Sequence record: LR756511.1
DNA: 64,000 nt
Strand: one strand, 5' to 3'
The position numbers were made by a program, and so were the translations under genes. This document shows, piece after piece, positions 31,753-45,113 of the stretch. Each line of letters begins with the position of its first letter. Position 1 is the first letter of the stretch. Under the pieces are notes generated by a model. The model was not told where the DNA came from and ran no database searches. It saw only the letters and a list, made by a program, of their open reading frames with translations.

Positions 31753-31923
31753 TTACAGAAAACTCAAAACTGCCAATAGAAGTGCCCCATAAACCAAAGC
31801 ACTAAGCCCAAGCACACAGCCGAATCCGTCCACCAAATCTCCAAGCCATATTCCCAAGAATAACACTAGAAACATACCTGGAAATAAGAATATAATTCCT
31901 AACGTGCGTAATAACTTACCCAT
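31753..31923 (-). CDS. small two-helix membrane protein (56 aa, not in the ORF track)
   Basis: MGKLLRTLGIIFLFPG...; ATGA overlap with the upstream stop. Confidence 0.5.
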   Translation of the reverse strand: MGKLLRTLGIIFLFPGMFLVLFLGIWLGDLVDGFGCVLGLSALVYGALLLAVLSFL

Positions 31924-32501
31924 CAAGGCTTACCTTTTGCCACTAATGTAAAATTAAACTTATATTTGTTGACTTTGACCATCTTGACTTCATGCTCATT
32001 GACGTTATTCATTATTCCATCTATCTTGTACTCACCAACAGCGCGCTTTAACGTTGGATTAAAGCGATGAATAACCTGTTCGATTAGTTGGTTCATATCT
32101 TCTCGATATAAAGCATTAACAGTCATGCAATAACTAATGTGTATCTTATTATCAAATACGCCTAACCCGTCATTATAAATATTGACAAGCGGTAAATGAA
32201 TTTTATCTTTTACAAAGTCGCTAACCATTGCAATAAGTGAAGTTCGTCGTTCCATTGCGGTATTGGCAAGCTCGTCATTCCCCCAAACTACAGGAACGGT
32301 CCAATCATCTCCTTCCTCATCTATAAGCACCAAGTTGCGGAACTCGTTCATTGTTGCTTCATCGCACTTCTTAATGAATTTGGAATACTTATACTTTTCA
32401 TCCTGTTCATTAGCCAAAGGCAATTCTTCTGGCTTCTTGGCACCCATGCCCAAAAATGCCATCATGCTTCCCAGCACGCTCATAAATGTCCGTCGATTCA
32501 T
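31923..32501 (-). CDS. twin-arginine leader plus compact T4 gp15-like (tail completion) domain
   Basis: MNRRTFM leader after GGAGG; VPVVWG, IHLPLVNI, YCMTVNALYREDMNQLIEQVIHRFNP parallel gp15. Confidence 0.7.
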   Translation of the reverse strand: MNRRTFMSVLGSMMAFLGMGAKKPEELPLANEQDEKYKYSKFIKKCDEATMNEFRNLVLIDEEGDDWTVPVVWGNDELANTAMERRTSLIAMVSDFVKDKIHLPLVNIYNDGLGVFDNKIHISYCMTVNALYREDMNQLIEQVIHRFNPTLKRAVGEYKIDGIMNNVNEHEVKMVKVNKYKFNFTLVAKGKP

Positions 32502-32757: not shown

Positions 32758-32986
32758 AGTCTTTCTTTATTGATGAAACCTCAAAGTCCATTGCTTCTCT
32801 AACATAGATTTTTTTCCCTCTGTATTCGACCATTGATTCTGCATATATATCCGTGAAGTCCACAAGAGAGGGCGGCTCAGGGAATAATACCACTTCTTGT
32901 AATTCTCCGTCAACCTCAACAGCTATTCCATAGTCGCAGCCAAGCAAAAATTCCTTTACTTCGGGCGTCATAATGAGTCCTTTCAC
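32717..32986 (-). CDS. hypothetical protein
   Basis: ORF in a coupled array. Confidence 0.5.
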   Translation of the reverse strand: MKGLIMTPEVKEFLLGCDYGIAVEVDGELQEVVLFPEPPSLVDFTDIYAESMVEYRGKKIYVREAMDFEVSSIKKDFEDEPTEEETQDG

Positions 32987-33207
32987 TCAGGCGGAACCTC
33001 ATAGGCAATTATTGGCGGGGGCGGCACCCATCCACTTAAATACCAGCCAATAATATTCCCTTCGTCTCCGAAAACAGTAAGGGGAGTGACCAACACTCCC
33101 CTCTTCTGACATTCTTCAACGTTTTCAACTACAACCTTCCAATTCTCTTCCATGTTGAATCTGCCATCAAATCGAAGAGAAATTTTAGGCACAATATCCA
33201 TACGCAT
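32983..33207 (-). CDS. hypothetical protein
   Basis: ORF in a coupled array. Confidence 0.45.
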   Translation of the reverse strand: MRMDIVPKISLRFDGRFNMEENWKVVVENVEECQKRGVLVTPLTVFGDEGNIIGWYLSGWVPPPPIIAYEVPPE

Positions 33208-33208
33208 T

Positions 33209-33586
33209 TTAGTAAAGCTTCAACTCTTTTGTGATCTTATCAATGTGTTCCGCATCATGTGGGCCAATAGCAAGACACGTTTTTGTGGGAACCCCATTAA
33301 ATTCTGTCTTACCACTATCCACAACCATATGAACCGTTAAACCCGCATCCCTGGCACGTTTGTAGACATCTACTAATGCCTCTTCACTGTCAACCTGTAA
33401 TGTGACTTTCGTGAAAGTCCCATGAATCCATTCCCGTTCTTCTGGACTAAGGAAAACAGTCCCATTGAAGAACTTCTGCACACGCTCCGATAGCCACATC
33501 ATCGAAGCATGACTACCCTGTGCTATCTCTTTACCCCTCCGCATCTTCAGGTCACGGCGTATCACTATCACTTGCTTTACGCTCAT
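33209..33586 (-). CDS. pth2: peptidyl-tRNA hydrolase type 2 (PTH2)
   Basis: KQVIVIRRDLKM..GK..AQ.SHA, KVTL, DSGKTEF.G.PT.TCLAIGP. Confidence 0.95.
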   Translation of the reverse strand: MSVKQVIVIRRDLKMRRGKEIAQGSHASMMWLSERVQKFFNGTVFLSPEEREWIHGTFTKVTLQVDSEEALVDVYKRARDAGLTVHMVVDSGKTEFNGVPTKTCLAIGPHDAEHIDKITKELKLY

Positions 33587-33887
33587 ATCTCATATCTGGA
33601 TAATCCAGATAATTTCCTTTCTCTGTCTCGTAAAATTGCCCATCCATTAACTTAATTCTCAAGTCATGGTGGCGAACATCATAGTCTTTATAGATACCTC
33701 GTCCCTTTTCATCAATCTTTACCGTTCCGTCTTCATTTCGCTCATAAATACGGAACACAATCTTCGTTTTGCTACATTCCACGATCTTTTGGCCGAAGCG
33801 ATTAACTCGGCCTGTATCAACGGCAGTATCGGGGTCAGGATAGATCAAAAGACAACCTTCGGTTCCTGCTGCTGGTTCACTTATCAT
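33552..33887 (-). CDS. hypothetical protein
   Basis: coupled ORF. Confidence 0.5.
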   Translation of the reverse strand: MISEPAAGTEGCLLIYPDPDTAVDTGRVNRFGQKIVECSKTKIVFRIYERNEDGTVKIDEKGRGIYKDYDVRHHDLRIKLMDGQFYETEKGNYLDYPDMRYERKASDSDTP

Positions 33888-34188
33888 AAATTCCTAGCAC
33901 CTGTTTAGCTGAATGTAATTGTCGAGCTTCGGTAAGACGCATCTGACACGCTTCACAATCAGGACAAAAGCAAGAGTGAGGACATTTCTTATCAGGCGGG
34001 GGAGCTAGTTTAGCCCATTCTTTCAAGTGATCCAACGTCTGTTCAGGATGCTCGTAAGAATAGCCTTGAAAGCCTTTCTTGCTGTGGTCAACAGGATTGA
34101 TTAAGCAATTATGCAAAAACTTAACAGTGTATTGAGCCTGCCGTAAAGCTGACTCTAACAGCACGACTTTAGCTTCATCGCTTGTCAT
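33877..34188 (-). CDS. hypothetical protein
   Basis: start MTSDEAK with GGAG RBS; the track extension across the tRNA is rejected. Confidence 0.5.
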   Translation of the reverse strand: MTSDEAKVVLLESALRQAQYTVKFLHNCLINPVDHSKKGFQGYSYEHPEQTLDHLKEWAKLAPPPDKKCPHSCFCPDCEACQMRLTEARQLHSAKQVLGIYDK

Positions 34189-34337
34189 TTTTTTGCAATC
34201 TCCACATTCCAATGACTTTTTCCATTCAAGCCGATCCATTTGTCGCTCCATTTCTTCTTCGGTTATTTGACCGTCTGTGCAGAGCGTAACATAATGGTCT
34301 AGAAGATTTCCTTTTGCGTATTCGTATTCTGTTTTAG

Positions 34338-34430
34338 TGGGCCGTGAGGGTTTCGAACCCCCGACTAAGGGATTATGAATCGCGGGTTGATAAACCCGTG
34401 TCCCCTGCTCTACCACTGAGCTAACGGCCC
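34338..34430 (-). tRNA. tRNA-Ile2 (CAU) with a 21-nt insertion in the anticodon loop
   Basis: GGGCCGT/ACGGCCC acceptor, GCTC/GAGC D stem, GGGGA/TCCCT anticodon stem, TTCGAAA T loop; removing 34379..34399 restores the loop CTCATAA. Confidence 0.85.
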
Positions 34431-34447
34431 TGTTCGTACATCTTGAT

Positions 34448-34690
34448 CTAGAGTTGCTTATAGACCCATTCGCCAGCTTTGCCCCAAATTGGACTATCCA
34501 ACTCGTCATTGGATGTGTGCAACTGAGGATAAATACGGCGACAGAGCAGTAGTTGGATTCTCTTCTCAGGGGATATTGGCTCTGTCCACTTCGGAACAGA
34601 TGTTGCTGCCTTTGCCTTCTTGGGAAGAAGGAAAGGAATAACAAGCACTCCAATAATTCTCTTAAGCCAACCGCGTCTTGTAAACATCAT
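34448..34690 (-). CDS. twin-arginine leader micro-protein with a capsid-like RRIYPQL motif
   Basis: TRRGWLK + hydrophobic stretch + AKA; KRIQLLLCRRIYPQL. Confidence 0.55.
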   Translation of the reverse strand: MMFTRRGWLKRIIGVLVIPFLLPKKAKAATSVPKWTEPISPEKRIQLLLCRRIYPQLHTSNDELDSPIWGKAGEWVYKQL

Positions 34691-35463
34691 GCGGCCCTCT
34701 TGAGTTCCTTAAAGATTTCCACCAGCGACCGTTGATCGGATTGCGCCGCTATAATTGGCTTAGTAACACTGTGCGTAATTGCGTATTTCCTGAATTGCTG
34801 TTCATTATTCAGGATCATCAAATAACGCATAATCAAACTATCTGTTGGCGGGAAGTCGCCTTGTAATACTACACACAATCTTTCAGTCATCCTGCCACGA
34901 TCATAGACTTTAGTTATACCGTGACCTGGGAATATTTGGTAAACTAAACCAGTCTTCCCTCTCACTGTCACATGACCGCGACGAATGAAATCCTTGAACT
35001 TATCATCGCCCAAAACCCTTCGTAACGTTTCTCTTGCTCGCATTTCCCGTGGGTCAGTCGTAAAGCCCAGCGGATTACATGACGAAAGAACGTTGGGCGC
35101 AACACGTTTGTCCAAAATCTCGCGGAGTTTTTCGGCAGCGGTTTTGGGCACTGAAACATCATAACCGCCAGTGGTTGTGATGTAATTAACCGCAGCATAA
35201 CCGTCGTAGACTCTAACCTGGACTGGTCCTTGAATATAATTGGTGTACGTATCTGAACAACTTGTTGCGGCAATTAAATTAACTCTATATTCGACATTTC
35301 TAAGTGTGGTTACATTATCGTTATATTGAATCCACGACGTATCAACCGCATTATTATATGTGACGGCAGACGTGGTGCCAGTAGTAAGCCACGTAAAATT
35401 ATTCGTGGCATACGTTCCTGCCGTCATTGTGCCAGTATTGCCGTAAAATGTTGCTAGCGCCAT
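34687..35463 (-). CDS. hypothetical protein; Thr/Tyr-rich N-terminus, C-terminal Cys-containing domain (possible E2-like)
   Basis: RLCVVLQGDFPPTDSLIMRYLMIL; coupled to a GG-ending protein. Confidence 0.55.
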   Translation of the reverse strand: MALATFYGNTGTMTAGTYATNNFTWLTTGTTSAVTYNNAVDTSWIQYNDNVTTLRNVEYRVNLIAATSCSDTYTNYIQGPVQVRVYDGYAAVNYITTTGGYDVSVPKTAAEKLREILDKRVAPNVLSSCNPLGFTTDPREMRARETLRRVLGDDKFKDFIRRGHVTVRGKTGLVYQIFPGHGITKVYDRGRMTERLCVVLQGDFPPTDSLIMRYLMILNNEQQFRKYAITHSVTKPIIAAQSDQRSLVEIFKELKRAA

Positions 35464-35750
35464 TTGTTTCTTACCTCATCAGCCATGACTTCCAGACCAT
35501 CCCAAGCATTTCCGTCACTAACGCGGGTCCAACCACAACCGCCGCCAAAAATCACATCGCTTATAGCGTCCGCAAACCCAACAAAGCGTCCGTACCAGTT
35601 GCATCTAGACTCAAATGCTGCCGCGACTTCCTCGTATGTTGTCATACTTGGAGTAGGAACCGTCCAATTGACTACTTCGCGGCCCAACTTAATTAACTGT
35701 TCGTCCGTAAGCGGACATTCATTGTTCATCTTACTTAAATCGTTATTCAC
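35454..35750 (-). CDS. hypothetical protein
   Basis: overlaps both neighbours. Confidence 0.5.
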   Translation of the reverse strand: MNNDLSKMNNECPLTDEQLIKLGREVVNWTVPTPSMTTYEEVAAAFESRCNWYGRFVGFADAISDVIFGGGCGWTRVSDGNAWDGLEVMADEVRNKWR

Positions 35751-36112
35751 TAACCACCTGCAACTTGTCCAATAGGTAAAAAGATAACTTCTTCGGCGTC
35801 TGGATCGAATTCATCCATGACTTCTGCCGTCGCCTTGCCGTCTGTGCCAACAAGATAGGGCACTAAGCCTTTGGCGATGCATTCATCGAACATAGCCTTT
35901 GCTTCGTCAATCTGGTCCATATCACGGCTATCCCAAACGATACGCTTATCGCCATCCTTGGGAGTAAGGAAACGGAAGGTCCGTTCCCACTTGTTTGCCG
36001 TCTCTTTATCCTTGAGAATCTTTAATTTCTCAGGAACAGCAATGCCAGCTTTAAGCGAGCTATTTTTGAGAACAGGAACTTCGATAAACCGTTCTTCGGC
36101 GGTAGCGTTCAT
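35750..36112 (-). CDS. C-terminal diglycine protein, probable beta-grasp (ubiquitin/ThiS/MoaD-like)
   Basis: beta-beta-alpha-beta-beta-beta pattern ending EVIFLPIGQVAGG-stop. Confidence 0.6.
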   Translation of the reverse strand: MNATAEERFIEVPVLKNSSLKAGIAVPEKLKILKDKETANKWERTFRFLTPKDGDKRIVWDSRDMDQIDEAKAMFDECIAKGLVPYLVGTDGKATAEVMDEFDPDAEEVIFLPIGQVAGG

Positions 36113-36121
36113 GGCTTCTCC

Positions 36122-36487
36122 TTATTGTTCGTCGCTGTTACGTCCAGCAATCTCGATCCATCGTTCACGGAAGTAATTGTCACGAATTAAGTCTTTATCA
36201 GACTTAATTATAACACCATCTCTGGTGCCATACTTGGATTTTTCTAGTTGTTTTGTAATTGGTTCTTTACTGCACGCAGATTTGGGGGGACAAACATCTT
36301 CGACAGGATCGCCGTGATTATATCGTCCATCATCTTGAATACGACCGTCCTTGATATATCTTTGGTGTCTATGTTTGCACATAGGACACTCAACCCATAC
36401 AACGCGGTTGTAATCCATCCTTAAACGAAAACGAATATAGGTGTGGCAATTGCCACAATACCATTCTTGGAAAACCTTGTCGTCCAT
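36122..36487 (-). CDS. zinc-ribbon hypothetical protein
   Basis: CGNC...CPMC.H.H. Confidence 0.55.
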   Translation of the reverse strand: MDDKVFQEWYCGNCHTYIRFRLRMDYNRVVWVECPMCKHRHQRYIKDGRIQDDGRYNHGDPVEDVCPPKSACSKEPITKQLEKSKYGTRDGVIIKSDKDLIRDNYFRERWIEIAGRNSDEQ

Positions 36488-36498
36488 TATAAGTCCCT

Positions 36499-36536
36499 TA
36501 AAAATAAATCCGTCCCCATTGCTAGGGACGGATTTA
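36499..36536 (-). terminator. intrinsic terminator downstream of the HNH gene
   Basis: 12-bp stem taaatccgtccc/gggacggattta followed by a T-run on the minus strand. Confidence 0.75.
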
Positions 36537-36543
36537 CCCTTCC

Positions 36544-37212
36544 CTAGCGTCCACGTTCGTTTTCACATTCTGAATCTAAATGGGGGCAAACCCCATTGTT
36601 AAAGTATCTCCCGCAATTGCAGTTCCAGCATAGCACCCGAAAACCATCTGGAAAATTGTTTTTAATCAGATAATTGCATATAGTTCCGTACTTTTTCTTG
36701 TAGTGTTTCCGATGTTCCGCACCATTTCCATCCTTGTGATCTATGGTCAGAAATCGAATATCGGACTCTTTACACCCTGAACATGCACAACATGGATTTA
36801 TTCCTCCATAATGAACAAGGACCGCTATTTTCTTTTTTAAATTATACGCTTTATGTCTTTCGCTTTCCAGTTTTCTACAATCGTTACAAAGTGTAGTAAC
36901 TGCATCATTTATAGCACACTTACTACACTTTCCTTCTTCCTTTAATCTTTGGCGGCGATTTTTACACAAGCTCCTTAAATTTAAAAGACACTTTTCACAA
37001 TATCTTTGCCCACTTTTAGGCTTTTCCCCGCAATTTGGGCATAAGCCTCCTTTGATGCGCTTATTTCTAGTTGTTTTATAAGGTATTGTTACTTCATTTG
37101 GACGACTGCACTGACGGCATTTAGGCCGATATTTATTTGTATCTTTGCGATAATCACAATAGCGTATTTTACATTTTTGGCATAATGGTTTATCTGCCTC
37201 TCCTGTTTGCAC
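36544..37212 (-). CDS. free-standing HNH-type (homing) endonuclease with Cys-rich N-terminus
   Basis: CACSGC..DIRFLTIDH..GNG...FRVLCWNCN. Confidence 0.75.
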   Translation of the reverse strand: MQTGEADKPLCQKCKIRYCDYRKDTNKYRPKCRQCSRPNEVTIPYKTTRNKRIKGGLCPNCGEKPKSGQRYCEKCLLNLRSLCKNRRQRLKEEGKCSKCAINDAVTTLCNDCRKLESERHKAYNLKKKIAVLVHYGGINPCCACSGCKESDIRFLTIDHKDGNGAEHRKHYKKKYGTICNYLIKNNFPDGFRVLCWNCNCGRYFNNGVCPHLDSECENERGR

Positions 37213-37411
37213 GCTCTGCCCTCCTTAAATCTTCCTCGCGCTCCTGGTCAACGACGACTAATTCAGGAGCGGTCTTATGACTATAAGAGTTAAAGCCAAC
37301 ATATTTTTTCTCTCTGGAACAACCAACACACGTCGTTGTATCTGGAAGAACTTCCAGACGCTCCGCAGGAATCGGATTCCCGCATTCTTCGCATAATTTT
37401 TCTTCGCTCAT
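37190..37411 (-). CDS. TraR/DksA C4-type zinc finger protein
   Basis: CEECGNPIPAERLEVLPDTTTCVGC. Confidence 0.85.
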   Translation of the reverse strand: MSEEKLCEECGNPIPAERLEVLPDTTTCVGCSREKKYVGFNSYSHKTAPELVVVDQEREEDLRRAERANRRGR

Positions 37412-38028
37412 TTTCGTTTAGTAAAGTTGTTGATCTTGTCCCAATCAGCATTAATGGTGATTGGCGCAAGAGATACCTTAACACCCAAAACATCTTGGTC
37501 AAGTGCAGTTTCTACGGTAAGTCTTGTTTTGTTGGACGGATCAAGCCACGTCCAAGTTCCAGGTTCGTTGCGAAGTCGGTCCCACATCTTCCACCACGCC
37601 AACACAGGCACCGCAGCCTTCAATTTTGCAGTATCGTCATGGATATGGACTTCCGTATCTTTTTGATGAATACGGAAATTGCCGAAATCAGCTTTTCCGC
37701 CTTTTGCCTTCGGTTCCTTTTTCTCGACTGTTGTTTCGCGTTCGCCGCCCATGATCTTTCTCCTCAGTTTGTTCAGAGTTTCAACATGATCTCTGTCCGC
37801 TATTTCTTCAAGTTCCTCATAAGCGAAATCCAAAAATTGAATTGCGCTATAGACGTTGTGGTTAAGATCATCAAAATCAGGGTCTTTGCTGCAATCGTAA
37901 TAACGGTTAATACACCTTAAACGATTAGCAGCTTTATTTAACAGAAAGATTGCTTCACGAATCTCCGTTGACCGTGCATGAATTGCAAAGTTTCTGGCAT
38001 CAATCTTTCTCTGTTTATTGCTTATCAT
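37408..38028 (-). CDS. hypothetical protein (possibly two fused ORFs)
   Basis: 206 aa coupled ORF. Confidence 0.5.
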   Translation of the reverse strand: MISNKQRKIDARNFAIHARSTEIREAIFLLNKAANRLRCINRYYDCSKDPDFDDLNHNVYSAIQFLDFAYEELEEIADRDHVETLNKLRRKIMGGERETTVEKKEPKAKGGKADFGNFRIHQKDTEVHIHDDTAKLKAAVPVLAWWKMWDRLRNEPGTWTWLDPSNKTRLTVETALDQDVLGVKVSLAPITINADWDKINNFTKRK

Positions 38029-38230
38029 AAGAACTTAAAGTCTTCTTGATTTCTTCGAAAGCGGTATCAGGACGATTCTTTAATAGCCATCGCATATTAA
38101 AGATATCATTCCCCATTCGTTTTAGCATTTTCAACCATTCGGCCAATTGGCGATGTTCCTGTCTACACTTTTCAACATTGCAAGTTGAAGCAACATCATT
38201 ACAATGTTGAATCGCTTCGTTAAGGTCCAT
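38015..38230 (-). CDS. hypothetical protein
   Basis: EAIQHC...C..EH.QLAEWL pattern common in phage small proteins. Confidence 0.55.
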   Translation of the reverse strand: MDLNEAIQHCNDVASTCNVEKCRQEHRQLAEWLKMLKRMGNDIFNMRWLLKNRPDTAFEEIKKTLSSYDKQ

Positions 38231-38452
38231 GTTGTCACTCCGTAGCCGACGTTCTGTTTTATGCTATCATTTCTCTAGTGGCCCCTACCATGCCTTCAAT
38301 CGCGTTGCTCACCCGCTAGGCAAATTTGGGTTAGACGCATTGTGGTTCAAACGATACTCGCTTTCGCTTTCTCTTCCACAAGGAGCAAATGTCCGTCGAA
38401 CTTCCTCACATCCTTAAAGGGTAGTGCGATAGCTCAAGTGACTACATCAACC

Positions 38453-39184
38453 TTAAATGATTAGATTATGCCAGTAAATGATCTTGTTCTGCCCTTCCTC
38501 GATTAAATCCTTACCATCCACCACCGCCAAGACCGCTTCCGTTGATGTCTTCCACTTATTGCGAACATGACCCAGCATAATCATTGCTTTAGCAAGCATT
38601 ATATCCTTAAATGCCTCGTCTATTGCGCCATTGATACTTCCTAGTTTCTTGGCGGTTGCATAACTTTCAAATTGTATCTTAGTGGATTCATACGCCGCGT
38701 CAAGCTGTTGCACATCTAACTCAATCTTGACAACAGGTGCGCCAAGCATTAACAGCACATAATCCTTAGCCTTATCTTTATCAGGAGCCTTAAATTCGAC
38801 TTCCACTTCTGGAATTTCTAATTCTGGTTCGGGCATCATAGTATCGCCCATACAACCATGCTCAAAATCAAAGATCGTAATGGCACCAGACATCGAGCAA
38901 CCAGGACGAACAGGAATTACAACAATATCGTAGTCTTTAAGGTACTCAAGTTTCCGCCATGCGTCTTTCATACGTTCGCAGAACGCTTCGGCCTTATAAG
39001 GCGGAAGTTGTCCTACATCAAGACGGTGGCATAAAAATCCACGCTTCTTGGGGGCAGTATCCACAGCCGCACTTCCAGCATGACCGCCGTAACTCTCTTC
39101 TTGTACAGCTGTAGCTTTACTTACAGCGGTGAGTCCTAAAAAACTGCAAATGCCAGCAATCCATCCTCTACGAGTTTCCATCAT
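38453..39184 (-). CDS. twin-arginine leader + portal(gp20)-like motif + compact neck(gp13)-like domain chimera
   Basis: TRRGWI leader; LDVGQLPPYKAEAFCERMK; KDYVLLMLGAPVVKIELD and DGKDLIEEG. Confidence 0.7.
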   Translation of the reverse strand: MMETRRGWIAGICSFLGLTAVSKATAVQEESYGGHAGSAAVDTAPKKRGFLCHRLDVGQLPPYKAEAFCERMKDAWRKLEYLKDYDIVVIPVRPGCSMSGAITIFDFEHGCMGDTMMPEPELEIPEVEVEFKAPDKDKAKDYVLLMLGAPVVKIELDVQQLDAAYESTKIQFESYATAKKLGSINGAIDEAFKDIMLAKAMIMLGHVRNKWKTSTEAVLAVVDGKDLIEEGQNKIIYWHNLII

Positions 39185-39494
39185 TTTCTCCTTCAAGCAA
39201 AATCAACTCAAACCGAGTGTTACCTTCTGCCGTTATATACGGATCAGCAACAACGTGAAAAGTAAATTCTTTTCTACACGCTAAGACTGACTTGGTAAAA
39301 TCTAAAGGATCGGCAATTTTCTTAGGCTTTGCAAATTCAAAACCTCCCCATACTGCCGCTTCGTTATATTTCTCTTGACTGGTAAACAGCGGCAAAAGGA
39401 ACTTGTCACCAACTTTGAGAAAGACGGGTCTATTCGTGAATTGGTTGAAGGGTAAGAGTAACCCAACTAAATCAATTTTTCCAGTGTTATTCAT
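39168..39494 (-). CDS. hypothetical protein (SseB N-terminal-like)
   Basis: PVFL.....LPLFTSQEK. Confidence 0.45.
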   Translation of the reverse strand: MNNTGKIDLVGLLLPFNQFTNRPVFLKVGDKFLLPLFTSQEKYNEAAVWGGFEFAKPKKIADPLDFTKSVLACRKEFTFHVVADPYITAEGNTRFELILLEGENDGNS

Positions 39495-39852
39495 TCGGCT
39501 GTGCCCACACTTCAGGATTTGCGCGTCTTGCTACCCGCAGAGCAACAAGCTGTTGGAGACGATGAATCCCTTCTTGAAATTCTCGGATATCGTCTCCACT
39601 CTTCTTATCTAAATTACAAAAAAATGCCCAAGCGTGTCCCAAATAGCCTAAGAGCAACGTTTCGTTTTCCGTAAGTCTAGCGTTGTCTTTCGCTTTGGTA
39701 AAAAACTCTGGCATTTTCTCCCCGTATAACTGCCATGTATTAGGCAGACTATTCAGGAAGTTTGGGTTGAGGCAGCAGCCCATGCAAGTAGGCGTCTCTG
39801 TCATATTACTACAACTTTCTCGATTGTAAAGCAAAAACCGCTCAAGAGACAA
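39487..39852 (-). CDS. hypothetical protein
   Basis: coupled ORF; true start probably internal. Confidence 0.45.
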   Translation of the reverse strand: MSLERFLLYNRESCSNMTETPTCMGCCLNPNFLNSLPNTWQLYGEKMPEFFTKAKDNARLTENETLLLGYLGHAWAFFCNLDKKSGDDIREFQEGIHRLQQLVALRVARRANPEVWAQPNE

Positions 39853-40078
39853 GCGTTACTCTGTTCTCTACTCCACAGCGGGCACACTCTATTGTGAACT
39901 CCCGTTTTGAACTAGCATTCTTATAGGCGAAGTCAGTCTTCCCATCACATAACCAGCAGTGAAAATATAGATTAGTATATCCAGCTAGCTGCTTTGGCTC
40001 AATTGGCGGATCAACCTTCTTAACTCCAAAAAGAAGACTGGCTATTACGTCAGAAACCGCCATAAATAGTGATCGCAT
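39842..40078 (-). CDS. zinc-ribbon hypothetical protein
   Basis: CWLC...CARC. Confidence 0.5.
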   Translation of the reverse strand: MRSLFMAVSDVIASLLFGVKKVDPPIEPKQLAGYTNLYFHCWLCDGKTDFAYKNASSKREFTIECARCGVENRVTLVS

Positions 40079-40083
40079 TGAAC

Positions 40084-40335
40084 CTATTTACGTTTATTAA
40101 AGCTCCTTCTTTTCTTGAAATGGAATTTCTTTCTAGGTTTTTGACCTGGAAATTTGAAATTTCCTCCACAAAGATCGCAACCGAAGGCTAGTTCAACTTC
40201 GTTTTGCCAACTTTCCTTTACAAATTGCGCATGGATAAAACCACCACAAGCGCATTTAGCTGGGTAGCCTTTGTAGCATTCTACACAGCGATGATCGCCC
40301 GCTGTATGTTCAGTTTTGTTTAGTAAAAAAGCCAT
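40084..40335 (-). CDS. zinc-binding hypothetical protein
   Basis: CVEC, CACGG.IH, CDLC. Confidence 0.55.
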   Translation of the reverse strand: MAFLLNKTEHTAGDHRCVECYKGYPAKCACGGFIHAQFVKESWQNEVELAFGCDLCGGNFKFPGQKPRKKFHFKKRRSFNKRK

Positions 40336-40409
40336 AACATCTCACTTCATTATCGAAACGAGAAACATAACAACTACGGTAATCGTTCCCATTGCAACCG
40401 CAAAAATAA

Positions 40410-40673
40410 TCATACTTTATAGTAGTACTTAGGGGTTATAACGTCTTGGTCGGCTACGGTTTCCCAGCCTGTCAAACCTTTAATTATAACGCCCAATGTT
40501 GGATGAATTCCTCGATACCACCGACGTACTCGCTTAAATGAGCCTTTTTGAAAAATTACTTTTTCGTCCAAAAGCTCTAGTTCGGTATTGCCCGCCACAA
40601 TCCGCCTTGTAAATAAAAGTAAGTCACTTATATCTACAACGGCACGCTCAGGATTTTCTTGAAGTAACATCAT
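40410..40673 (-). CDS. hypothetical protein
   Basis: coupled ORF. Confidence 0.5.
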   Translation of the reverse strand: MMLLQENPERAVVDISDLLLFTRRIVAGNTELELLDEKVIFQKGSFKRVRRWYRGIHPTLGVIIKGLTGWETVADQDVITPKYYYKV

Positions 40674-40676
40674 AAA

Positions 40677-41405
40677 TCACGGAGTTTTAAATATTTCCTT
40701 CACTGTTACACACGTTTCCAGATAAGTGTCTATGCTTTCACCAGCATCACCCCAATATCCATCAAGCTTGTGCGCCTTTAAATTTCCAGCTTTTAAGTAA
40801 ATATTATTTAAGTCCGTAACCTCTAACTCATTCCTTCTCGATGGCTTTAAATCCTTCAACTTCTTCCAAACTTCCTTATCATACATGTACAACCCTATTG
40901 CAATCCAATTAGATTTAGGATTCTTTGGTTTTTCTATGATTTCCGTTACTTTATCACCATCCATATTCACAACGCCATACCATTCTGGTCGTTGGTTCTG
41001 AGTCACAAATATTCTAGCCCCTTCTGGATTATTGTTAAAATCCTCTACTACTTCATGAAAGGGTTTCTGTAGAATGTTATCGCCCAACATTACACAAATA
41101 TTATCTCCATCCGTCCAATCTTCCGCAAGAGCTAAAGCATGAGCAATTCCGCCCGCCTCTTTTTGATAAGTGTAAGCTATATGCTTTAACCCAAACTCCT
41201 CTCCATTTCCTAATATTCTTAAGAAATCACCAACATTTTGACCACCACAAACTATAAGAATATCTGTAATGCCACTATTAACCATACTTTGAATTGGATA
41301 ATAGATCATCGGCTTATTATATACGGGAAGCAAGTGCTTGTTAACCACATTGGTCAAAGGTCTGAGCCTTGTTCCCATTCCACCAGCTAAAATTACCCCT
41401 CGCAA
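40677..41405 (-). CDS. sugar-1-phosphate nucleotidylyltransferase (RmlA/RfbA-like)
   Basis: GVILAGGMGTRLRPLT..NKHLLPVY.KPMIYYP, LGDN, EKP, RNELEVTD. Confidence 0.92.
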   Translation of the reverse strand: MRGVILAGGMGTRLRPLTNVVNKHLLPVYNKPMIYYPIQSMVNSGITDILIVCGGQNVGDFLRILGNGEEFGLKHIAYTYQKEAGGIAHALALAEDWTDGDNICVMLGDNILQKPFHEVVEDFNNNPEGARIFVTQNQRPEWYGVVNMDGDKVTEIIEKPKNPKSNWIAIGLYMYDKEVWKKLKDLKPSRRNELEVTDLNNIYLKAGNLKAHKLDGYWGDAGESIDTYLETCVTVKEIFKTP

Positions 41406-41415
41406 AGTTCCTCCA

Positions 41416-41613
41416 TTAAATCATATAATCCCAACACCCACAACAATAACATTCTATGTCATCTGCTTCGCCTTCTCCCTGACAAATAAAGCAGTCTGGA
41501 TCGTATAACCGTCCGCAGGTAAAACAAACCCAGCCGCCCATTTCAACATCCCATATTCTCATTTTACGTTTATAACTAACTTGTAAGTCTTGTCGCTCGA
41601 TTTGCGGTCCCAT
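41416..41613 (-). CDS. Cys-rich hypothetical protein
   Basis: small coupled ORF. Confidence 0.45.
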   Translation of the reverse strand: MGPQIERQDLQVSYKRKMRIWDVEMGGWVCFTCGRLYDPDCFICQGEGEADDIECYCCGCWDYMI

Positions 41614-41930
41614 ATTCGTGTATAATATAGTGTTAATGTATGTTTCCCTTGCTTTAAAGCTTTAAATTGCATAACCTGCGTCACGGGCGCACCAATTCTC
41701 ATCGGGCTTCTAGGAACATCCTCATATTGTGACTGACCTATGTGAGTAAAGTCCGTGCCACCATCAAATAACCACTGATAACCCGTACTAGGATTAGAAG
41801 TGAGCCTCACAGTAAACGTATCGCCTACCGAATGTTCAATCTCAATACCATTATCGGTATCTTTGTATGTCGGTTGTGCCATAGTTAAAGCCATAAGTAA
41901 AACTAATTGCATTTCACACCAAGGCTGCAT
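41559..41930 (-). CDS. protease inhibitor I42 (chagasin family), secreted
   Basis: signal peptide; LTSNPSTGYQW, GAP, FKA...G, YTRIWD. Confidence 0.85.
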   Translation of the reverse strand: MQPWCEMQLVLLMALTMAQPTYKDTDNGIEIEHSVGDTFTVRLTSNPSTGYQWLFDGGTDFTHIGQSQYEDVPRSPMRIGAPVTQVMQFKALKQGKHTLTLYYTRIWDRKSSDKTYKLVINVK

Positions 41931-42139
41931 TCTGGACAGACTGGATGTTCTATTACTATTTGTGGACCAACGCCACCTGGATCATCCGCCCACTCCAGCT
42001 TTTTCTTACCATTCTTGTCCAACGTCCAACGCTTTTGAACCTTCGCCCTGAATGGGTGATGGTGCATTCTTGTTACCACCATTTTTTTGCAAGGTGTCTT
42101 TGGTGGCACAGACTTTCTGCATAAACTGCATCTAAACAT
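41903..42139 (-). CDS. hypothetical protein
   Basis: CSLC...CPEC. Confidence 0.5.
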   Translation of the reverse strand: MFRCSLCRKSVPPKTPCKKMVVTRMHHHPFRAKVQKRWTLDKNGKKKLEWADDPGGVGPQIVIEHPVCPECSLGVKCN

Positions 42140-42149
42140 GAGTTAATCC

Positions 42150-43064
42150 TTAAGATAAAAGAGTGTTTCGCAAGCTATTTCTTGCCCACTTTTCCCCTGT
42201 GAGCCTTTCATATGCTTCAACATACTTGTTCCGAGTTTTTTCAATGATATCAGGCGGCAAAGGAGGAGGGGAACTCTCTTTGTCCCAACCGCTATTTTCA
42301 GCCCAATCCCGAATAAACTGCTTGTCAAAAGAAGGAATTGACGCATCCAACTTATAAGCATCTAAAGGCCAAAACCGCGAGCTATCAGGCGTAATAACCT
42401 CATCAATCAAAACAACAGTATTGTTCAAATAAGGCAAAATGCCCCATTCAAACTTAGTATCCGCAATAATAATGCCATTAGCCCAAGCAACCTGAGCCGC
42501 TTCTGTATATAATTCAACACTTAAAGCTTCAATTTCAGCAGCTAATTCAACACCAATTTCTTTTGCCATAACATCAAAGGACACGTTTTCGTCATGTCCC
42601 GTTGCCGCTTTTATGGCTGGTGTAAATATAGGTTTTGGAAATTGTTGATTTTGCCTTAAATTTGGTGGCAAAGGAATACCGCAAACACTACCTGTTTTCT
42701 GATATTCCTTCCACGCGGACCCAGCCAAATAACCTCGCACCACACATTCAAACGGAATCACTTCGGCTCGCTCTACCAACATCGTTCTGCTACGAAACTC
42801 TGGCTCCCTAAAGTCTTCGGGCATCTGATTTAGGTCCGTAGCGATCAAATGATACGGCATTTCCAGCTTTTTTGCCCAAAAACACGAAATTGCCTGAAGG
42901 ATTTTTCCTTTATCTTGAATGGTGTTGGGGAAAACATGATCGAACGCACTAACCCGATCCGTTGTAACAATTATTAACATTGTCTCGCCAAGCTCGTAAA
43001 CATCCCGAACCTTCCCGCGACGACAAACGTAATTATCAACTTTTGTTTCTCGTAAACCTTCCAT
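42150..43064 (-). CDS. purC: phosphoribosylaminoimidazole-succinocarboxamide (SAICAR) synthase
   Basis: GKVRDVY, TDRVSAFD, ECVVRGYLAGSAW, ADTKFEWG, DEVITPDSSRFW, FDKQFIRDW. Confidence 0.97.
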   Translation of the reverse strand: MEGLRETKVDNYVCRRGKVRDVYELGETMLIIVTTDRVSAFDHVFPNTIQDKGKILQAISCFWAKKLEMPYHLIATDLNQMPEDFREPEFRSRTMLVERAEVIPFECVVRGYLAGSAWKEYQKTGSVCGIPLPPNLRQNQQFPKPIFTPAIKAATGHDENVSFDVMAKEIGVELAAEIEALSVELYTEAAQVAWANGIIIADTKFEWGILPYLNNTVVLIDEVITPDSSRFWPLDAYKLDASIPSFDKQFIRDWAENSGWDKESSPPPLPPDIIEKTRNKYVEAYERLTGEKWARNSLRNTLLS

Positions 43065-43112
43065 GCGGCTATCTTAACAAAAAAAATGGGGACAGTCAAT
43101 GTATATAAATTG

Positions 43113-43535
43113 ATGGAAACATTCGTAGATTTCATTGAAAACAAAGAAGACTTGCCTTCTGAAGCAAAAGAAGCAATGAGAGAAATTCAAATCGTCATGA
43201 CCGAAACACTTGGCTGTACCAAAAAGACCAATGGCTTCGGTATTAATGACATCAAATTTGAATTGATAAATCAGCAGAAAAGTAGCAAAGGTCTACAACT
43301 AAACTTAGAGGCACGCGGTTCAGCTATTGTAAAAGGCAAAGAGCATTTGAGTCGCCTGCTACAAAGACTTGTAAGCGACTCTAGAGAAGACTTGTGGAAA
43401 AAGAACATCTTTTTCGAGATGATGTATCACAAGGTTGATATGTCAGAAAATAAACTGGAGATGGACGAGACGCCATTAGGATTAAAAAACACCGTTCATT
43501 TCAGTGTTATTTGTGCGGCACTCATATTCACTTAG
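43113..43535 (+). CDS. putative head-packaged protein (METFVDFIE N-terminus)
   Basis: TATATA box 5 nt before this internal ATG; CTS-like start. Confidence 0.5.
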   Translation: METFVDFIENKEDLPSEAKEAMREIQIVMTETLGCTKKTNGFGINDIKFELINQQKSSKGLQLNLEARGSAIVKGKEHLSRLLQRLVSDSREDLWKKNIFFEMMYHKVDMSENKLEMDETPLGLKNTVHFSVICAALIFT

Positions 43536-43538
43536 AGT

Positions 43539-44336
43539 ATGAAAGCAATTCTACTAACAGGCAGTATCGGAGACGTAATTGCCGTAGAGTCCCTCATGAC
43601 AGAAGAGGAACGCAAAAACATTCATTCTATCTTCTATGCAAGCAGGGTCGCACAACCATGCATGGAATTATTTCGAAGGATCAAAACCTTCCCTAACTTA
43701 AAAACACAAACCTGTCTCTGGCATGATTTCAGCCGAATATTTGGCTTTAGTAGCAAAGAACACTTTTTAGATATATTATGCGCGTACCAACCTGAACCCT
43801 TACAATCAGCGGTTAGGGAATTAATGGGACTAGTCGAAGATTATTCTATAGCCACTATATTCCATCAAACTACGCGAAAATATAAATTCTCCAGCTTTAT
43901 AGATGCTACACTTACAAATATTACAAAATTCAAATTACCAAATGATTACTTTGTCATATGCCCTTATAGCAGTAATGACAAAAGAGACATAAGAAGAGAT
44001 TATAATGACGATGATTGGGATAATACCATAGATATTTTAACCAAATTAGGAGTTCCAGGTGTAGTTATCAATCGTGGGGAGGACAAAGTGCCTGCACATT
44101 CATCCTTGATGAACTTGAGCAATCAGACGGCAATTTGGGAAGCAATAGAAATTGTTAAAAACGCAAAAGGATATATTGGAATTGATACTGGCTTTTCAGT
44201 CGTTTCAGCTAAATGCCACGCTTCTAAGAATATTATAATTAAGTCACATAACGATCATTGCTATCGCTGGGCGCACTGTTATTTTGCTCCAAAACAATCA
44301 TTCGAATTTCTAAAATGTCAAATAACTAGGGATTAG
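43539..44336 (+). CDS. glycosyltransferase family 9-like
   Basis: GSIGDVIA, YFVICPYSS, AKGYIGIDTG. Confidence 0.7.
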   Translation: MKAILLTGSIGDVIAVESLMTEEERKNIHSIFYASRVAQPCMELFRRIKTFPNLKTQTCLWHDFSRIFGFSSKEHFLDILCAYQPEPLQSAVRELMGLVEDYSIATIFHQTTRKYKFSSFIDATLTNITKFKLPNDYFVICPYSSNDKRDIRRDYNDDDWDNTIDILTKLGVPGVVINRGEDKVPAHSSLMNLSNQTAIWEAIEIVKNAKGYIGIDTGFSVVSAKCHASKNIIIKSHNDHCYRWAHCYFAPKQSFEFLKCQITRD

Positions 44337-44480
44337 CTTTCCTCTTTTTATAAATCTTTTGTACATATTGCCATAGAGTCTTCGGTGGTGGACTATATTT
44401 CTTTGGTTGACCTTCTCGGTTTTTCTTTCGATCTAGCCAAAAATTCTTCACGAAATTATCTAGGCTTAATATATAATTTC

Positions 44481-44693
44481 ATGAAATTTAATGAATGGTT
44501 AACACAGAATAATAAAGATTTTGACGAGCTATCGCCTGACATTGGCATGGAAACCATTGAAGATGTTGACTTAATTGAAAGCCAAGTCGAACAATGGATA
44601 ACCAAACTTGTTGGTCTACTTGACAATGCTAGCGAAGAAACTCGCCAAAGACTCGTAGGCAAAATAGTTAGCGAGATTCAGAAGCGGATTTAA
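44481..44693 (+). CDS. putative head-packaged small acidic protein (MKFNEWL N-terminus)
   Basis: TATATA box 5 nt before ATG; CTS-like start. Confidence 0.55.
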   Translation: MKFNEWLTQNNKDFDELSPDIGMETIEDVDLIESQVEQWITKLVGLLDNASEETRQRLVGKIVSEIQKRI

Positions 44694-45105
44694 GCTCGGC
44701 TCTGATCTTCATTAGTATTTTCCCAAGATGATTCTCGCCTTTGCCTTTACAAATTCCCCAAAAGCAATCGCCCCAGGAGTTCGTTTCCTCAATGTATGCA
44801 TCTCCCGTTGCCAAAAGCTTCTCTTTTAACTCTCGGTGTTTGGTAAACTTCTGACGTACTAAGTCTTCCATAACCCCAATTTTGATCTGCTCCCAATCAG
44901 GGCGTAGCGTAACACTCTTGCCAAGCTTCTTCGCATCCCCAGGTTTAGACGATTCCCTAATCCTTCGGCGTTCCGCAGGAACCGTCGTCTTCGCAGCCTG
45001 ATAAGCATGTTCCGTCGAGCTATATTCCAGACCATCGTATTCAACGACCGCTGGATAAAAGTTCGACAAAAACCGATACGTCTTATTGAATCCTAAAATG
45101 TCCAT
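44668..45105 (-). CDS. NADAR (YbiA/DUF1768) family ADP-ribosyl hydrolase
   Basis: FLSNFY, STEHAYQAAK, KFTKH..L..KLLATG, DCFWG, GENHLGKILM. Confidence 0.92.
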   Translation of the reverse strand: MDILGFNKTYRFLSNFYPAVVEYDGLEYSSTEHAYQAAKTTVPAERRRIRESSKPGDAKKLGKSVTLRPDWEQIKIGVMEDLVRQKFTKHRELKEKLLATGDAYIEETNSWGDCFWGICKGKGENHLGKILMKIRAELKSASESR

Positions 45106-45113
45106 AACCCCTC

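What the first reader, a model, noticed from the sequence alone, without database searches (positions are those of the whole stretch)
38453..39184. Chimera of a portal (gp20) motif and a compact neck (gp13) domain
Seen: after the RR leader comes LDVGQLPPYKAEAFCERMK, which parallels the T4-type portal IDVGNLP..KAEQYL motif. Then KDYVLLMLGAPVVKIELDVQQL...DGKDLIEEG matches the N- and C-terminal helices of gp13 with the middle deleted. Portal and neck are direct binding partners in virions. Inference: a single-chain mimic of the portal-neck interface.
Basis: partly seen in the sequence, partly recalled or inferred. Interest (0 to 1): 0.72.

Follow-up and report, generated by a model that had tools for sequence, protein, structure and literature searches.

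The report
Exported portal-clip plus neck-bundle fusion protein
A 595-kb uncultured phage carries a real, conserved gene that joins a copy of its portal's docking tip to the helical core of its neck protein behind an export-type leader; the build is new, and what it does is still unknown.

Summary
Window 38453..39181 (minus strand) encodes a 242-aa protein with three parts.

- **Leader (aa 1-25):** METRRGWIAGICSFLGLTAVSKATA looks like a cleavable twin-arginine (Tat) signal.
- **Clip domain (aa ~45-108):** homologous to the clip of this phage's own T4-type portal. It shares 13 identical residues in a row (DVGQLPPYKAEAF). hhalign gives 98.5% probability, E=2.4e-15.
- **Bundle domain (aa ~129-242):** the four-helix "domain I" of the T4 gp13 neck adaptor. 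The family profile hits solved T4 gp13 at residues 9-51 and 238-297. [quoted passage not shown]

The phage's real portal and neck genes lie 250-300 kb away, so this is a third, non-structural gene. At least 50 sequence clusters from uncultured large phages have the clip-bundle build. Three have the reverse domain order. The Tat-like leader follows the clip domain (36 of 70 clip proteins against 1 of 96 bundle-only proteins).

The clip keeps the residues that in T4 bind the large terminase and gp13. Function is inferred only: an exported or membrane-targeted module that reproduces the portal-neck junction and binds connector partners. The same phage has more cut-down connector copies (gp15-like with the same leader, gp14-like, and a clip fragment).

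Verdict: new variant of known parts, mechanism open.

The parts
38453..39181 (-). Whole gene: 242 codons plus stop (P0001). It overlaps the stop of the upstream ORF (39168..39494) by 14 nt.
   Evidence: 14 full-length homologues at 30-44% identity (BLASTP column; 31-48% in the MAFFT alignment). 111 clusters at E<=1e-3 in the search of all 1.84 billion representatives.
39188..39193 (-). Shine-Dalgarno AAGGAG, 6 nt upstream of the ATG at 39181. The TTG at 39196 that the ORF listing takes as the start lies just 5' of this site and is unlikely to be the start.
   Evidence: Read directly from the sequence. Homologues start M-x-x-RR.
39107..39181 (-). Tat-like signal peptide, aa 1-25: MET-RR-GWI, a 15-residue h-region (AGICSFLGLTAV) and a c-region SKATA with A-x-A.
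   Evidence: Sequence. RRxF[LMF] leaders on 31 of 51 clip-bundle homologues, and 36 of 70 clip-containing against 1 of 96 bundle-only proteins. The apparently leaderless P0004 has MDKNRRGFMAW when read from its true start. No signal-peptide predictor was available.
39050..39106 (-). Low-confidence spacer, aa 26-44. 'SYGGHAG' aligns with the YGKQGEW(I/V)LYKQ motif of some homologues. That motif also occurs in the middle of true neck proteins.
   Evidence: pLDDT below 50 for aa 18-36.
38858..39049 (-). Portal-clip-like domain, aa 45-108: strand, then the tip G-Q-L-P-P-Y-K, then the helix KAEAFCERMKDAWRK (the T4 alpha6 equivalent), then a hairpin around IPVRP. The long distal loop of the portal clip is deleted.
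   Evidence: AF2 pLDDT is 90 or higher. Fold search found no portal match.
38798..38857 (-). Flexible acidic linker, aa 109-128.
   Evidence: pLDDT below 50 for aa 113-122. Length varies across the alignment.
38648..38797 (-). First half of the gp13 domain-I bundle, aa ~129-178 (T4 gp13 residues ~5-51). It contains KDYVLLMLGAPVVKIELD, the most conserved stretch of the family.
38456..38629 (-). Second half of the gp13 domain-I bundle, aa ~185-242 (T4 gp13 ~238-298). The protein ends right after the last helix, so there is no portal-binding C-terminal arm.
   Evidence: Foldseek probability against T4 gp13 chains is 0.97-0.99.

Best explanation
**What it is (shown).** This is a functional, non-virion paralogue made from two duplicated pieces of the phage's own head-tail connector.
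- The first piece is the portal clip domain. In T4 it is the docking site for the large terminase during packaging and for gp13 afterwards.
- The second piece is the four-helix-bundle core (domain I) of the gp13 neck adaptor.
- A cleavable Tat-type leader precedes both.

It lacks every part that would build it into a virion. From the portal it lacks the stem, wing and crown. From gp13 it lacks the swing domain, the fibritin-binding domain and the C-terminal arm that inserts between portal clips.

**How it most likely works (inferred).**
1. The two domains pack against each other as clip and gp13 domain I do at the portal-neck junction.
2. The protein folds in the cytoplasm and is then delivered to, or across, the inner membrane by the Tat route.
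3. There it acts as a free-standing copy of the portal-vertex docking surface and binds, by competition, something that normally recognises that surface.

The candidate partners I rank highest are connector-binding components of the same or a closely related phage: the terminase, the neck or stopper proteins, or the DNA-end and ejection complex of a superinfecting phage. The outcome would be control of head completion, or exclusion or sensing of superinfection.

The identity and architecture are secure. The export route is probable. The partner and the biological role are guesses.
For: **Architecture and homology:**

**The real portal and neck are elsewhere in the genome.**
- Portal: PHROG 213, E=1e-72.
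- Neck module: gp13-, gp14- and gp15-like genes plus tail tube genes.

**Purifying selection and age.**
- At least 50 clip-bundle clusters.
- The 70 non-portal clips are split from 44 portal clips by one branch, support 1.0.
- True necks form their own clade, support 0.96.

**The partner-binding surface is kept.**
- The chimera clip consensus IVFYINVGQLPPFKAEAFIERLKDKF is almost the portal consensus RVFYIDVGQLPPFKAEAFIERLKDQF.
- G57, L59, P61, K63, E65, R70, K72, P90 and R92 are invariant in the 14-member alignment.
- In T4 the aligned residues N291, M292, R295 and K296 are needed for packaging, and a 24-aa peptide of residues 288-311 binds gp17 and blocks packaging (PMC4493910).
- K296 and R339 contact gp13 (PMC12929587).

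**The two domains work together:** fusions exist in both orders (P0015, P0016, P0082).

**It cannot dock as a neck:** chimeras have a median of 3 residues after the last helix, against 13 or more in true necks.

**Leader:**. About six RR leaders occur in the whole genome, and three of them sit on connector paralogues.

**Non-structural, unconserved neighbourhood:**
Against: - No experiment or complex prediction supports docking of the two domains or any partner.
- The pTM of the full AF2 model is only 0.51, so the relative position of the domains is not predicted with confidence.
- Fold searches did not retrieve portal clips for the N-domain. They found only generic beta-alpha-beta folds at E>0.07.
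- The gp14-binding adaptor-loop motif is intact in 42 of 48 necks but only 8 of 54 chimeras, and not in this protein.
- The partners implied by the conserved surface (terminase, neck proteins) are cytoplasmic, while the leader predicts an extracytoplasmic mature protein. This tension is unresolved.
- Some family members have no leader, or carry zinc ribbons instead.
- The host is unknown, and no Tat predictor was run.
Confidence: 0.4

Rival explanations
1. It regulates packaging or neck assembly in the cytoplasm. Before export, or instead of it, the clip domain binds the phage's own large terminase as the T4 clip peptide does. It might also capture the C-terminal arm of the true neck protein. 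This would keep these proteins off DNA or proheads until the right time. The leader would then serve only to tether the protein at the membrane, where T4-type proheads assemble, or to clear it later.
For: - A T4 clip peptide (residues 288-311) binds gp17 and inhibits packaging, and T4 heads start on the inner membrane through the portal (PMC4493910, PMC9026906).
- The clip tip and helix are almost identical to the portal consensus.
- The gene sits among early-type small genes, not structural genes.
- Leaderless family members exist.
Against: - The leader has all the marks of a cleaved export signal with an N-in orientation, so the mature domains should end up on the far side of the membrane.
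- No timing or binding data exist.
- A self-directed terminase inhibitor would be costly.
Confidence: 0.22
2. It is an anti-defence decoy. A portal or neck look-alike would soak up or blind host sensors that recognise portal or terminase, such as Avs-type STAND NTPases.
For: - Portal and terminase are known Avs triggers (established knowledge, not tested here).
- The protein keeps a conserved portal surface.
- The family is confined to phages.
Against: - Avs sensors are cytoplasmic, while the leader predicts export.
- Only about 60 residues of the portal are present.
- There is no neighbouring anti-defence context.
- I found no literature on portal-clip decoys.
Confidence: 0.08
3. It is a minor structural or assembly component. 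It could be a membrane-anchored nucleator or chaperone for portal-ring assembly, analogous to T4 gp40. Its clip strands would pair with those of portal subunits. Alternatively it could be an extra neck or collar subunit of the virion.
For: - The portal clip sheet is built from strands of neighbouring subunits, so a free clip could pair with portal monomers (PMC4493910).
- Huge phages scatter their structural genes.
- The phage has further paralogues of the gp14- and gp15-like proteins that could form a second connector set.
Against: - The predicted leader topology puts the domains outside the cytoplasm.
- It lacks the C-arm and swing domain that hold gp13 on the portal.
- It is not in the structural module.
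Confidence: 0.12
4. It is a decaying remnant of duplicated structural genes and has no function.
For: It is a truncated mosaic of structural genes, and this protein's adaptor loop is degenerate.
Against: - The ORF is intact, with a strong ribosome-binding site.
- More than 50 diverged clusters keep both domains and the leader.
- Invariant residues are concentrated on one surface.
- AF2 folds both domains with confidence.
Confidence: 0.02

Closest known systems
T4 gp13 neck adaptor (head-tail adaptor Ad2; Pfam PF26809 Phage_T4_gp13; PHROG 211)
   Same: It has the four-helix bundle 'domain I' (T4 residues 3-51 and 239-300), including the LGAP(I/V)(I/V)x(I/V)EL segment. It is detectable by profile (E=1.4e-6 against PDB 9mkb) and by fold (Foldseek probability 0.97-0.99).
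   Different: - It has no swing domain, no fibritin-binding domain and no C-terminal portal-binding arm.
- The adaptor loop is degenerate.
- It is fused to a portal piece and carries an export leader.
- It is encoded far from the gp14- and gp15-like neck genes.
- In the domain-I tree the true necks form their own clade, apart from the chimeras and the stand-alone bundle proteins.
T4-type portal protein gp20 (Pfam PF07230; PHROG 213), clip domain residues 279-358
   Same: It has the strand, tip, alpha6 helix and hairpin of the clip, and shares 13 identical residues in a row with this phage's own portal. Residues aligned with T4 K296 and R339 (gp13 contacts) are invariant in the 14-member alignment, as is the one aligned with M292. 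The position aligned with N291 is usually Q, N or S.
   Different: - Only about 60 of about 850 residues are present.
- The distal clip loop is deleted.
- Stem, wing and crown are absent.
- The AF2 model closes the sheet within one chain, whereas in the portal it is shared between subunits.
- Fold search does not recover portals.
Synthetic 24-residue T4 gp20 clip peptide (residues 288-311) that binds gp17 and inhibits DNA packaging (cited in PMC4493910)
   Same: It covers the same stretch of the clip that is best conserved in this family. It shows that an isolated clip segment can bind the terminase.
   Different: It is a laboratory peptide, not a natural gene. No natural free-standing clip protein had been described in the literature I could search.
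Bacterial Tat substrates with short leaders (for example E. coli SufI; recalled from general knowledge)
   Same: It has a twin arginine near the N-terminus, a Gly- and Ala-rich h-region of about 15 residues, a basic residue in the c-region and an A-x-A cleavage site.
   Different: It is phage-encoded, and the passenger is derived from virion proteins. Export has not been demonstrated.

Membership tests
T4 gp13-type neck adaptor (Ad2 / PF26809 / PHROG 211) | Four-helix-bundle domain I formed by the N-terminal and C-terminal helices | tested here: met
   - Profile against PDB gp13: E=1.4e-6, two stretches at 9-51 and 238-297.
- Own neck: E=7e-12 and 7e-5.
- Foldseek probability 0.97-0.99.
- PHROG 211: E=0.0027.
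T4 gp13-type neck adaptor (Ad2 / PF26809 / PHROG 211) | Swing domain (T4 52-192) and fibritin-binding domain (190-239) inserted between the helices | tested here: not met
   The alignment skips own-neck residues 94-241. Only a loop of about 6 residues lies between the modelled helices ending at aa 178 and starting at aa 185.
T4 gp13-type neck adaptor (Ad2 / PF26809 / PHROG 211) | C-terminal arm that inserts between portal clip domains | tested here: not met
   The protein ends at the last helix. Chimeras have a median of 3 residues after the bundle match, against 13 or more in 48 true necks.
T4 gp13-type neck adaptor (Ad2 / PF26809 / PHROG 211) | Adaptor loop that binds gp14 (T4 266-279; P..G....hxh[DE]G..L in this clade) | tested here: not met
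   The motif is present in 42 of 48 necks but only 8 of 54 chimeras. Here the loop reads KTSTEAVLAVVDG.
T4 gp13-type neck adaptor (Ad2 / PF26809 / PHROG 211) | Encoded in the neck and tail module next to gp14- and gp15-like genes | tested here: not met
   The true neck module lies about 248 kb away, at record position 466-473 kb.
T4-type portal protein (gp20 / PF07230 / PHROG 213) | Clip domain (strand, alpha6 helix, hairpin) | tested here: met
   - hhalign against the own portal: 98.5%, E=2.4e-15.
- BLASTP: E=4e-10.
- 4 of 14 family members give sub-threshold PF07230 hits at the same profile positions.

This holds at sequence level only. Fold search was inconclusive.
T4-type portal protein (gp20 / PF07230 / PHROG 213) | Stem, wing and crown domains; a protein of about 500-850 aa that forms the dodecameric channel | tested here: not met
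   Only portal residues 512-580 are matched. No other part of the portal aligns.
Twin-arginine (Tat) exported proteins | N-terminal RR-x-hydrophobic-hydrophobic motif, a moderately hydrophobic h-region and an A-x-A cleavage site | tested here: met
   - The leader reads MET-RR-GWI-AGICSFLGLTAV-SKATA.
- The same pattern occurs in 31 of 51 clip-bundle homologues.
- P0004 also has it when read from its true start.

This was a pattern inspection, not a trained predictor.
Twin-arginine (Tat) exported proteins | Export that depends on TatABC | not testable with these tools
   This needs a reporter fusion in wild-type and tatC-deleted laboratory strains. The host of the phage is unknown.

The most novel reading that the evidence does not exclude
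This phage, and perhaps its clade, may export a cut-down second set of connector layers. The set would be the clip plus gp13-core fusion, a gp15-like paralogue with the same leader, a leaderless gp14-like paralogue that could hitch-hike, and a leader-bearing clip fragment. These would assemble outside the cytoplasm into a miniature portal-neck ring or channel. The device would bind the DNA end or ejection complex of superinfecting phages, to exclude them or to signal lysis delay. That would be a previously unknown kind of phage envelope machine built from virion parts.
Probability: 0.1. Interest if true: 0.85.

Novelty: new variant of a known kind. Interest (0 to 1): 0.62.

Why it matters
Portal and neck proteins are regarded as strictly structural, single-copy parts of tailed phages. 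Here their contact surfaces have been copied, trimmed, fused and given an export-type leader. The product has been kept for a long time in many uncultured large phages.

If it binds terminase, neck proteins or incoming phage components, it would be the first natural free-standing portal-vertex mimic. It would give a handle on how packaging ends, how necks attach, or how huge phages keep out competitors.

It also warns annotators. A hit to the gp13 family (PF26809) or a weak hit to Portal_T4 does not mean a virion protein. For structural biology it offers a small, soluble, single-chain version of the clip-adaptor junction.

Tried and rejected
**Searches that found nothing useful**
- Pfam and NCBIfam scans of the protein: no Pfam hit at all, and one chance-level NCBIfam hit. 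The local Pfam copy seems to lack PF26809.
- phmmer of the single protein against PDB: nothing.
- PHROG scans of the gp14-like and gp15-like paralogues and of the other RR-leader ORFs: nothing.
- A homologue search for the leader plus gp15-like paralogue: only itself.
- A scan of 185,579 species genomes: only phage-like portal and neck pieces in MAGs, no full chimera and no host clue.
- Literature searches for LR756511, for clip decoys, and for Tat signals on phage connector proteins: nothing relevant.
- No intrinsic terminator or convincing promoter next to the gene.

**Tests that came back inconclusive**
- Fold search of the whole model and of the N-domain alone against PDB, and of the whole model against BFVD. 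gp13 is recovered. Portals are not, and only generic beta-alpha-beta folds appear. So the portal origin rests on sequence, not on fold.
- The clip HMM does not reach T4 gp20 directly. hhalign does pick the right T4 residues (284-310), but only at P=0.002. The link to T4 runs through the phage's own portal, which matches T4 gp20 at E=1e-33.
- The search for related loci with the clip alignment failed for lack of a conserved stretch. I replaced it with a degenerate DNA pattern scan.

**Ideas I dropped**
- The N-half as a circularly permuted neck middle domain rather than portal. I dropped this once the own-portal match was found. A short neck-derived motif, YGKQGEW, does survive upstream of the clip in some homologues.
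- A functional link to neighbouring genes. An NTP-transferase and a SAICAR synthase recur nearby, but only in close relatives that share synteny. More distant relatives keep only this gene.
Full report
**1. The gene**

The window matches LR756511.1 at 99.6% identity over this gene. LR756511.1 is an unannotated 595,163-bp 'uncultured phage' record. Window position plus 186,000 gives the record position. The window contains no N.

The finding lies on the minus strand. The ORF listing reports 38453..39196 from a TTG. That TTG lies just 5' of the ribosome-binding site AAGGAG (39188-39193). The ATG at 39181, six bases downstream of that site, gives the 242-aa protein that the protein collection also holds as P0001. 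All numbering below is for P0001. The start overlaps the stop of the upstream ORF by 14 nt. No terminator-like site flanks the gene.

**2. The C-terminal half is the core of a gp13 neck adaptor**

- PHROG 211 'head-tail adaptor Ad2' gave a weak hit (E=0.0027).
- tblastn against 50,697 phage records gave many marginal hits to 'neck protein' at aa 136-179.
- The large protein search returned about 50 proteins of about 300 aa. They share only KDYVLLMLGAPVVK(I/V)ELD at one end and AMIMLGHIRGKY...DG..L at the other.
- One of these proteins, P0018, finds jumbo-phage 'head-tail adaptor Ad2' and 'neck protein' genes. It also finds a 300-aa gene in LR756511.1 itself at record 472308-473210.
- That gene sits in a T4-type neck and tail module. 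The module holds PHROG 211 (E=6e-13), a gp14-like head closure Hc2, a gp15-like tail sheath stabiliser and two tail tube genes.
- BLASTP of P0001 against this true neck gives two separate matches: aa 136-175 to neck 54-93 (63% identity, E=7e-12), and aa 199-242 to neck 242-286 (31%, E=7e-5). Neck residues 94-241 are skipped.
- A profile of 14 family members hits solved T4 gp13 (9mkb, 9lu4) at E=1.4e-6. Again there are two stretches, gp13 9-51 and 238-297. A domain-only HMM gives E=2.5e-11 against T4 gp13.
- Foldseek of the AF2 model finds T4 gp13 chains with probability 0.97-0.99. It also finds gp13-type neck proteins in BFVD.

[quoted passage not shown] - a swing domain (52-192);
- a fibritin-binding domain (190-239);
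- a gp14-binding adaptor loop (266-279);
- a portal-binding C-terminal arm (301-308).

The window protein therefore has domain I and nothing else. It ends with the last helix. Chimeras have a median of 3 residues after the bundle, against 13 or more in 48 true necks. The adaptor-loop motif is present in 42 of 48 necks but only 8 of 54 chimeras, and not in this protein.

**3. The N-terminal half is the portal clip**

I read the rest of LR756511.1 in pieces, leaving out the window's own coordinates. I then searched its 4332 six-frame ORFs.

- T4 gp20 finds one portal, at record 531017-533593 (E=1e-33). PHROG 213 confirms it (E=1e-72).
- Around its residue 512 the portal reads CFYVDVGQLPPYKAEAFMDRIKEQFRK...IWIPIRPQSNT. 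P0001 reads CHRLDVGQLPPYKAEAFCERMKDAWRK...VVIPVRPGCS.
- BLASTP gives 60% identity over 35 aa, E=4e-10.
- hhalign of the family's clip alignment against the portal gives 98.5% probability, E=2.4e-15, 50 columns at 46% identity.
- The whole-family profile finds only four ORFs in the genome: itself, the neck (3.7e-26), the portal (1.6e-11) and a small ORF described in section 7.
- Against T4 gp20 alone, hhalign picks residues 284-310 but weakly (P=0.002). The clip HMM does not reach T4. Four of 14 members give sub-threshold Portal_T4 hits at the matching profile positions.

In T4, residues 279-358 form the clip. This domain projects from the capsid and binds the terminase gp17 and later gp13. N291, M292, R295 and K296 are needed for packaging. 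A peptide of residues 288-311 binds gp17 and blocks packaging (PMC4493910). R295, K296 and R339 contact acidic helix ends of gp13, and the gp13 arm inserts between neighbouring alpha6 helices (PMC12929587).

A scan of IMG/VR for G-x-L-P-P-x-K-A-E-A showed that the motif marks this clade's portals: 65 of 70 ORFs carrying it are portals of about 840 aa. The consensus of 70 non-portal clips is almost the consensus of 44 portals over the strand and helix. The long distal loop is cut out.

The AF2 models fold the domain with confidence as strand-helix-strand-strand. Fold search returned only generic beta-alpha-beta folds and no portal. This may be because the portal's clip sheet is shared between subunits whereas the model closes it within one chain. 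Whatever the reason, the portal origin rests on sequence evidence.

**4. The leader**

Residues 1-25, MET-RR-GWI-AGICSFLGLTAV-SKATA, have the layout of a short Tat signal: a twin arginine followed by hydrophobic residues, a Gly- and Ala-rich h-region of about 15 residues, a basic residue and A-x-A.

Homologues read MDKNRRGFMAWLAGFFGLGAV..., MDRRTFFTAAASLVGAAA..., MDRRKLLRFLGLGSLFG...ASA and so on. By a simple rule, 36 of 70 clip-containing relatives have such a leader, against 1 of 96 that have only the bundle. This undercounts the leaders. P0004 looked leaderless, but read from its true start it begins MDKNRRGFMAW. No trained predictor was available, and export itself is untested.

**5. The family**

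The search of all 1.84 billion representatives found 111 clusters at E<=1e-3. Among 165 collected relatives the builds are:

| Build | Count |
|---|---|
| True necks | 48 |
| Stand-alone bundle proteins (108-160 aa) | 48 |
| Clip-bundle | 51 |
| Bundle-clip, reverse order, no leader | 3 |
| Clip only | 12 |
| Leader-clip-clip | 2 |

A few are fused to zinc ribbons or long N-terminal regions.

In a tree, all 70 non-portal clips are split from the portal clips by a single branch (support 1.0). True necks form their own clade (0.96). The fusion is therefore old and maintained, not a recent accident.

No cultured phage in the phage collection has a full-length member. None of 185,579 species genomes has one either.

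**6. Surroundings**

The gene sits in a long run of small minus-strand genes with few recognisable domains. Those recognised are a DksA/TraR zinc finger and a zinc ribbon, with a sugar-nucleotide transferase 1.5 kb upstream. One close relative (L099) shares synteny across window 32986-45117. More distant relatives keep only this gene. The context therefore says 'not a structural module' and little else.

**7. More cut-down connector copies in the same phage**

A search for RR leaders across the genome found about six. Three of them sit on connector paralogues: this gene and the first two ORFs below.

- A small ORF at record 410487-410744 (...SRRNFLKSTLAFLAMGGGLVGIAKA... then VWYVDISNLPSCHAEDFISKLKEKL). 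It matches the portal clip region, and it has a relative in another phage.
- Window 31923-32501 (MNRRTFMSVLGSMMAFLGMG...). It is a shortened paralogue of the gp15-like protein (E=2e-21).

A leaderless, N-terminally shortened paralogue of the gp14-like protein lies at record 268049-268522 (E=2e-24). The gp15-like paralogue has no relatives in the protein collection, so this wider set may be peculiar to this genome.

**8. Mechanism**

Shown:
- the mosaic architecture;
- the loss of every virion-anchoring element;
- the retention of the clip's partner-binding tip and helix;
- the presence of the two domains in both orders;
- the link between leader and clip.

Inferred:
- the domains dock as in the virion junction;
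- the protein is exported by Tat;
- it acts as a free copy of the portal-vertex docking surface.

The main difficulty is that the partners suggested by the conserved surface are cytoplasmic while the leader points outward.

I rank an exported binding module for connector-recognising components first (0.4 including the secure structural part). Next come a cytoplasmic packaging or neck regulator (0.22), an assembly or minor structural factor (0.12) and an anti-defence decoy (0.08). The pseudogene reading is excluded by conservation.

**9. Verdict**

The interpretation as a chimera is right and can be stated more precisely: portal clip plus gp13 domain I. The interface-mimic idea is plausible but unproven. 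The defence angle is unsupported. The Tat-type leader, the size and age of the family, and the companion paralogues are new information.

Noticed in passing
window 31923..32501 (minus strand): A 192-aa protein with the same kind of leader (MNRRTFMSVLGSMMAFLGMG...) followed by a shortened paralogue of the phage's gp15-like tail sheath stabiliser (phmmer E=2e-21 against L001:9347-10399). It has no relatives in the 5.8-billion-protein collection and no PHROG hit.
   Followed up: partly
LR756511.1 268049-268522 (L007:18049-18522, minus strand), outside the window: A 157-aa paralogue of the gp14-like head-closure protein (E=2e-24). It lacks about 40 N-terminal residues and has no leader. Together with the finding and the gp15-like paralogue, it gives the phage a second, cut-down copy of three successive connector layers.
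   Followed up: partly
LR756511.1 410487-410744 (L010:13487-13744, minus strand), outside the window: An 80-aa ORF with a near-perfect Tat motif (SRRNFLKS) followed by a portal stem-end and clip fragment (RRVWYVDISNLPSCHAEDFISKLKEKL). A relative exists near the chimera gene of another phage (L101:497-931, E=1.5e-9).
   Followed up: partly
LR756511.1 129144-129626 and 157864-158250 (L005, L006), outside the window: Two more ORFs with RR leaders (MERRGFMFSVLAFLGAG..., MDRRSFLGVATVGLIPL...). Their mature parts match no PHROG family. The second has a leaderless paralogue at record 331125-331448.
   Followed up: partly
LR756511.1 531017-533593 (L012:44017-46593, minus strand), outside the window: The phage's portal ORF is 859 codons long. 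It appears to carry an intein-like insert in its N-terminal third (...DEACVAGDTLIS ... SCVMHNCQKD...). Some clade portals found in IMG/VR are about 1250 aa, which suggests further inserts.
   Followed up: no
window 36122..37411 and 39842..40335 (minus strand): A run of small cysteine-rich proteins around the finding. They include a DksA/TraR C4 zinc finger (37190..37411, Pfam E=5e-10) and several CxxC-rich ORFs with no family. Some relatives of the finding are themselves fused to zinc ribbons (P0100, P0101, P0121, P0122).
   Followed up: no
window 40677..41405 and 42150..43064 (minus strand): A sugar-nucleotide transferase (the homologous genes in L099 and L100 carry Pfam NTP_transferase) and a 304-aa ORF whose homologues there carry SAICAR_synt lie just upstream. 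Both recur near the chimera gene in the two relatives L099 and L100. This is probably shared synteny, not a functional link.
   Followed up: partly
homologues P0007, P0008, P0013, P0066, P0101, P0063 (not in the window); remnant at window ~39050..39106: A short motif, YGKQGEW(I/V)LYKQ, lies in the middle (swing-region) part of true neck proteins. It also sits upstream of the clip in several chimeras, so the ancestral fusion held three pieces, not two. In the window protein it has decayed to SYGGHAG.
   Followed up: partly
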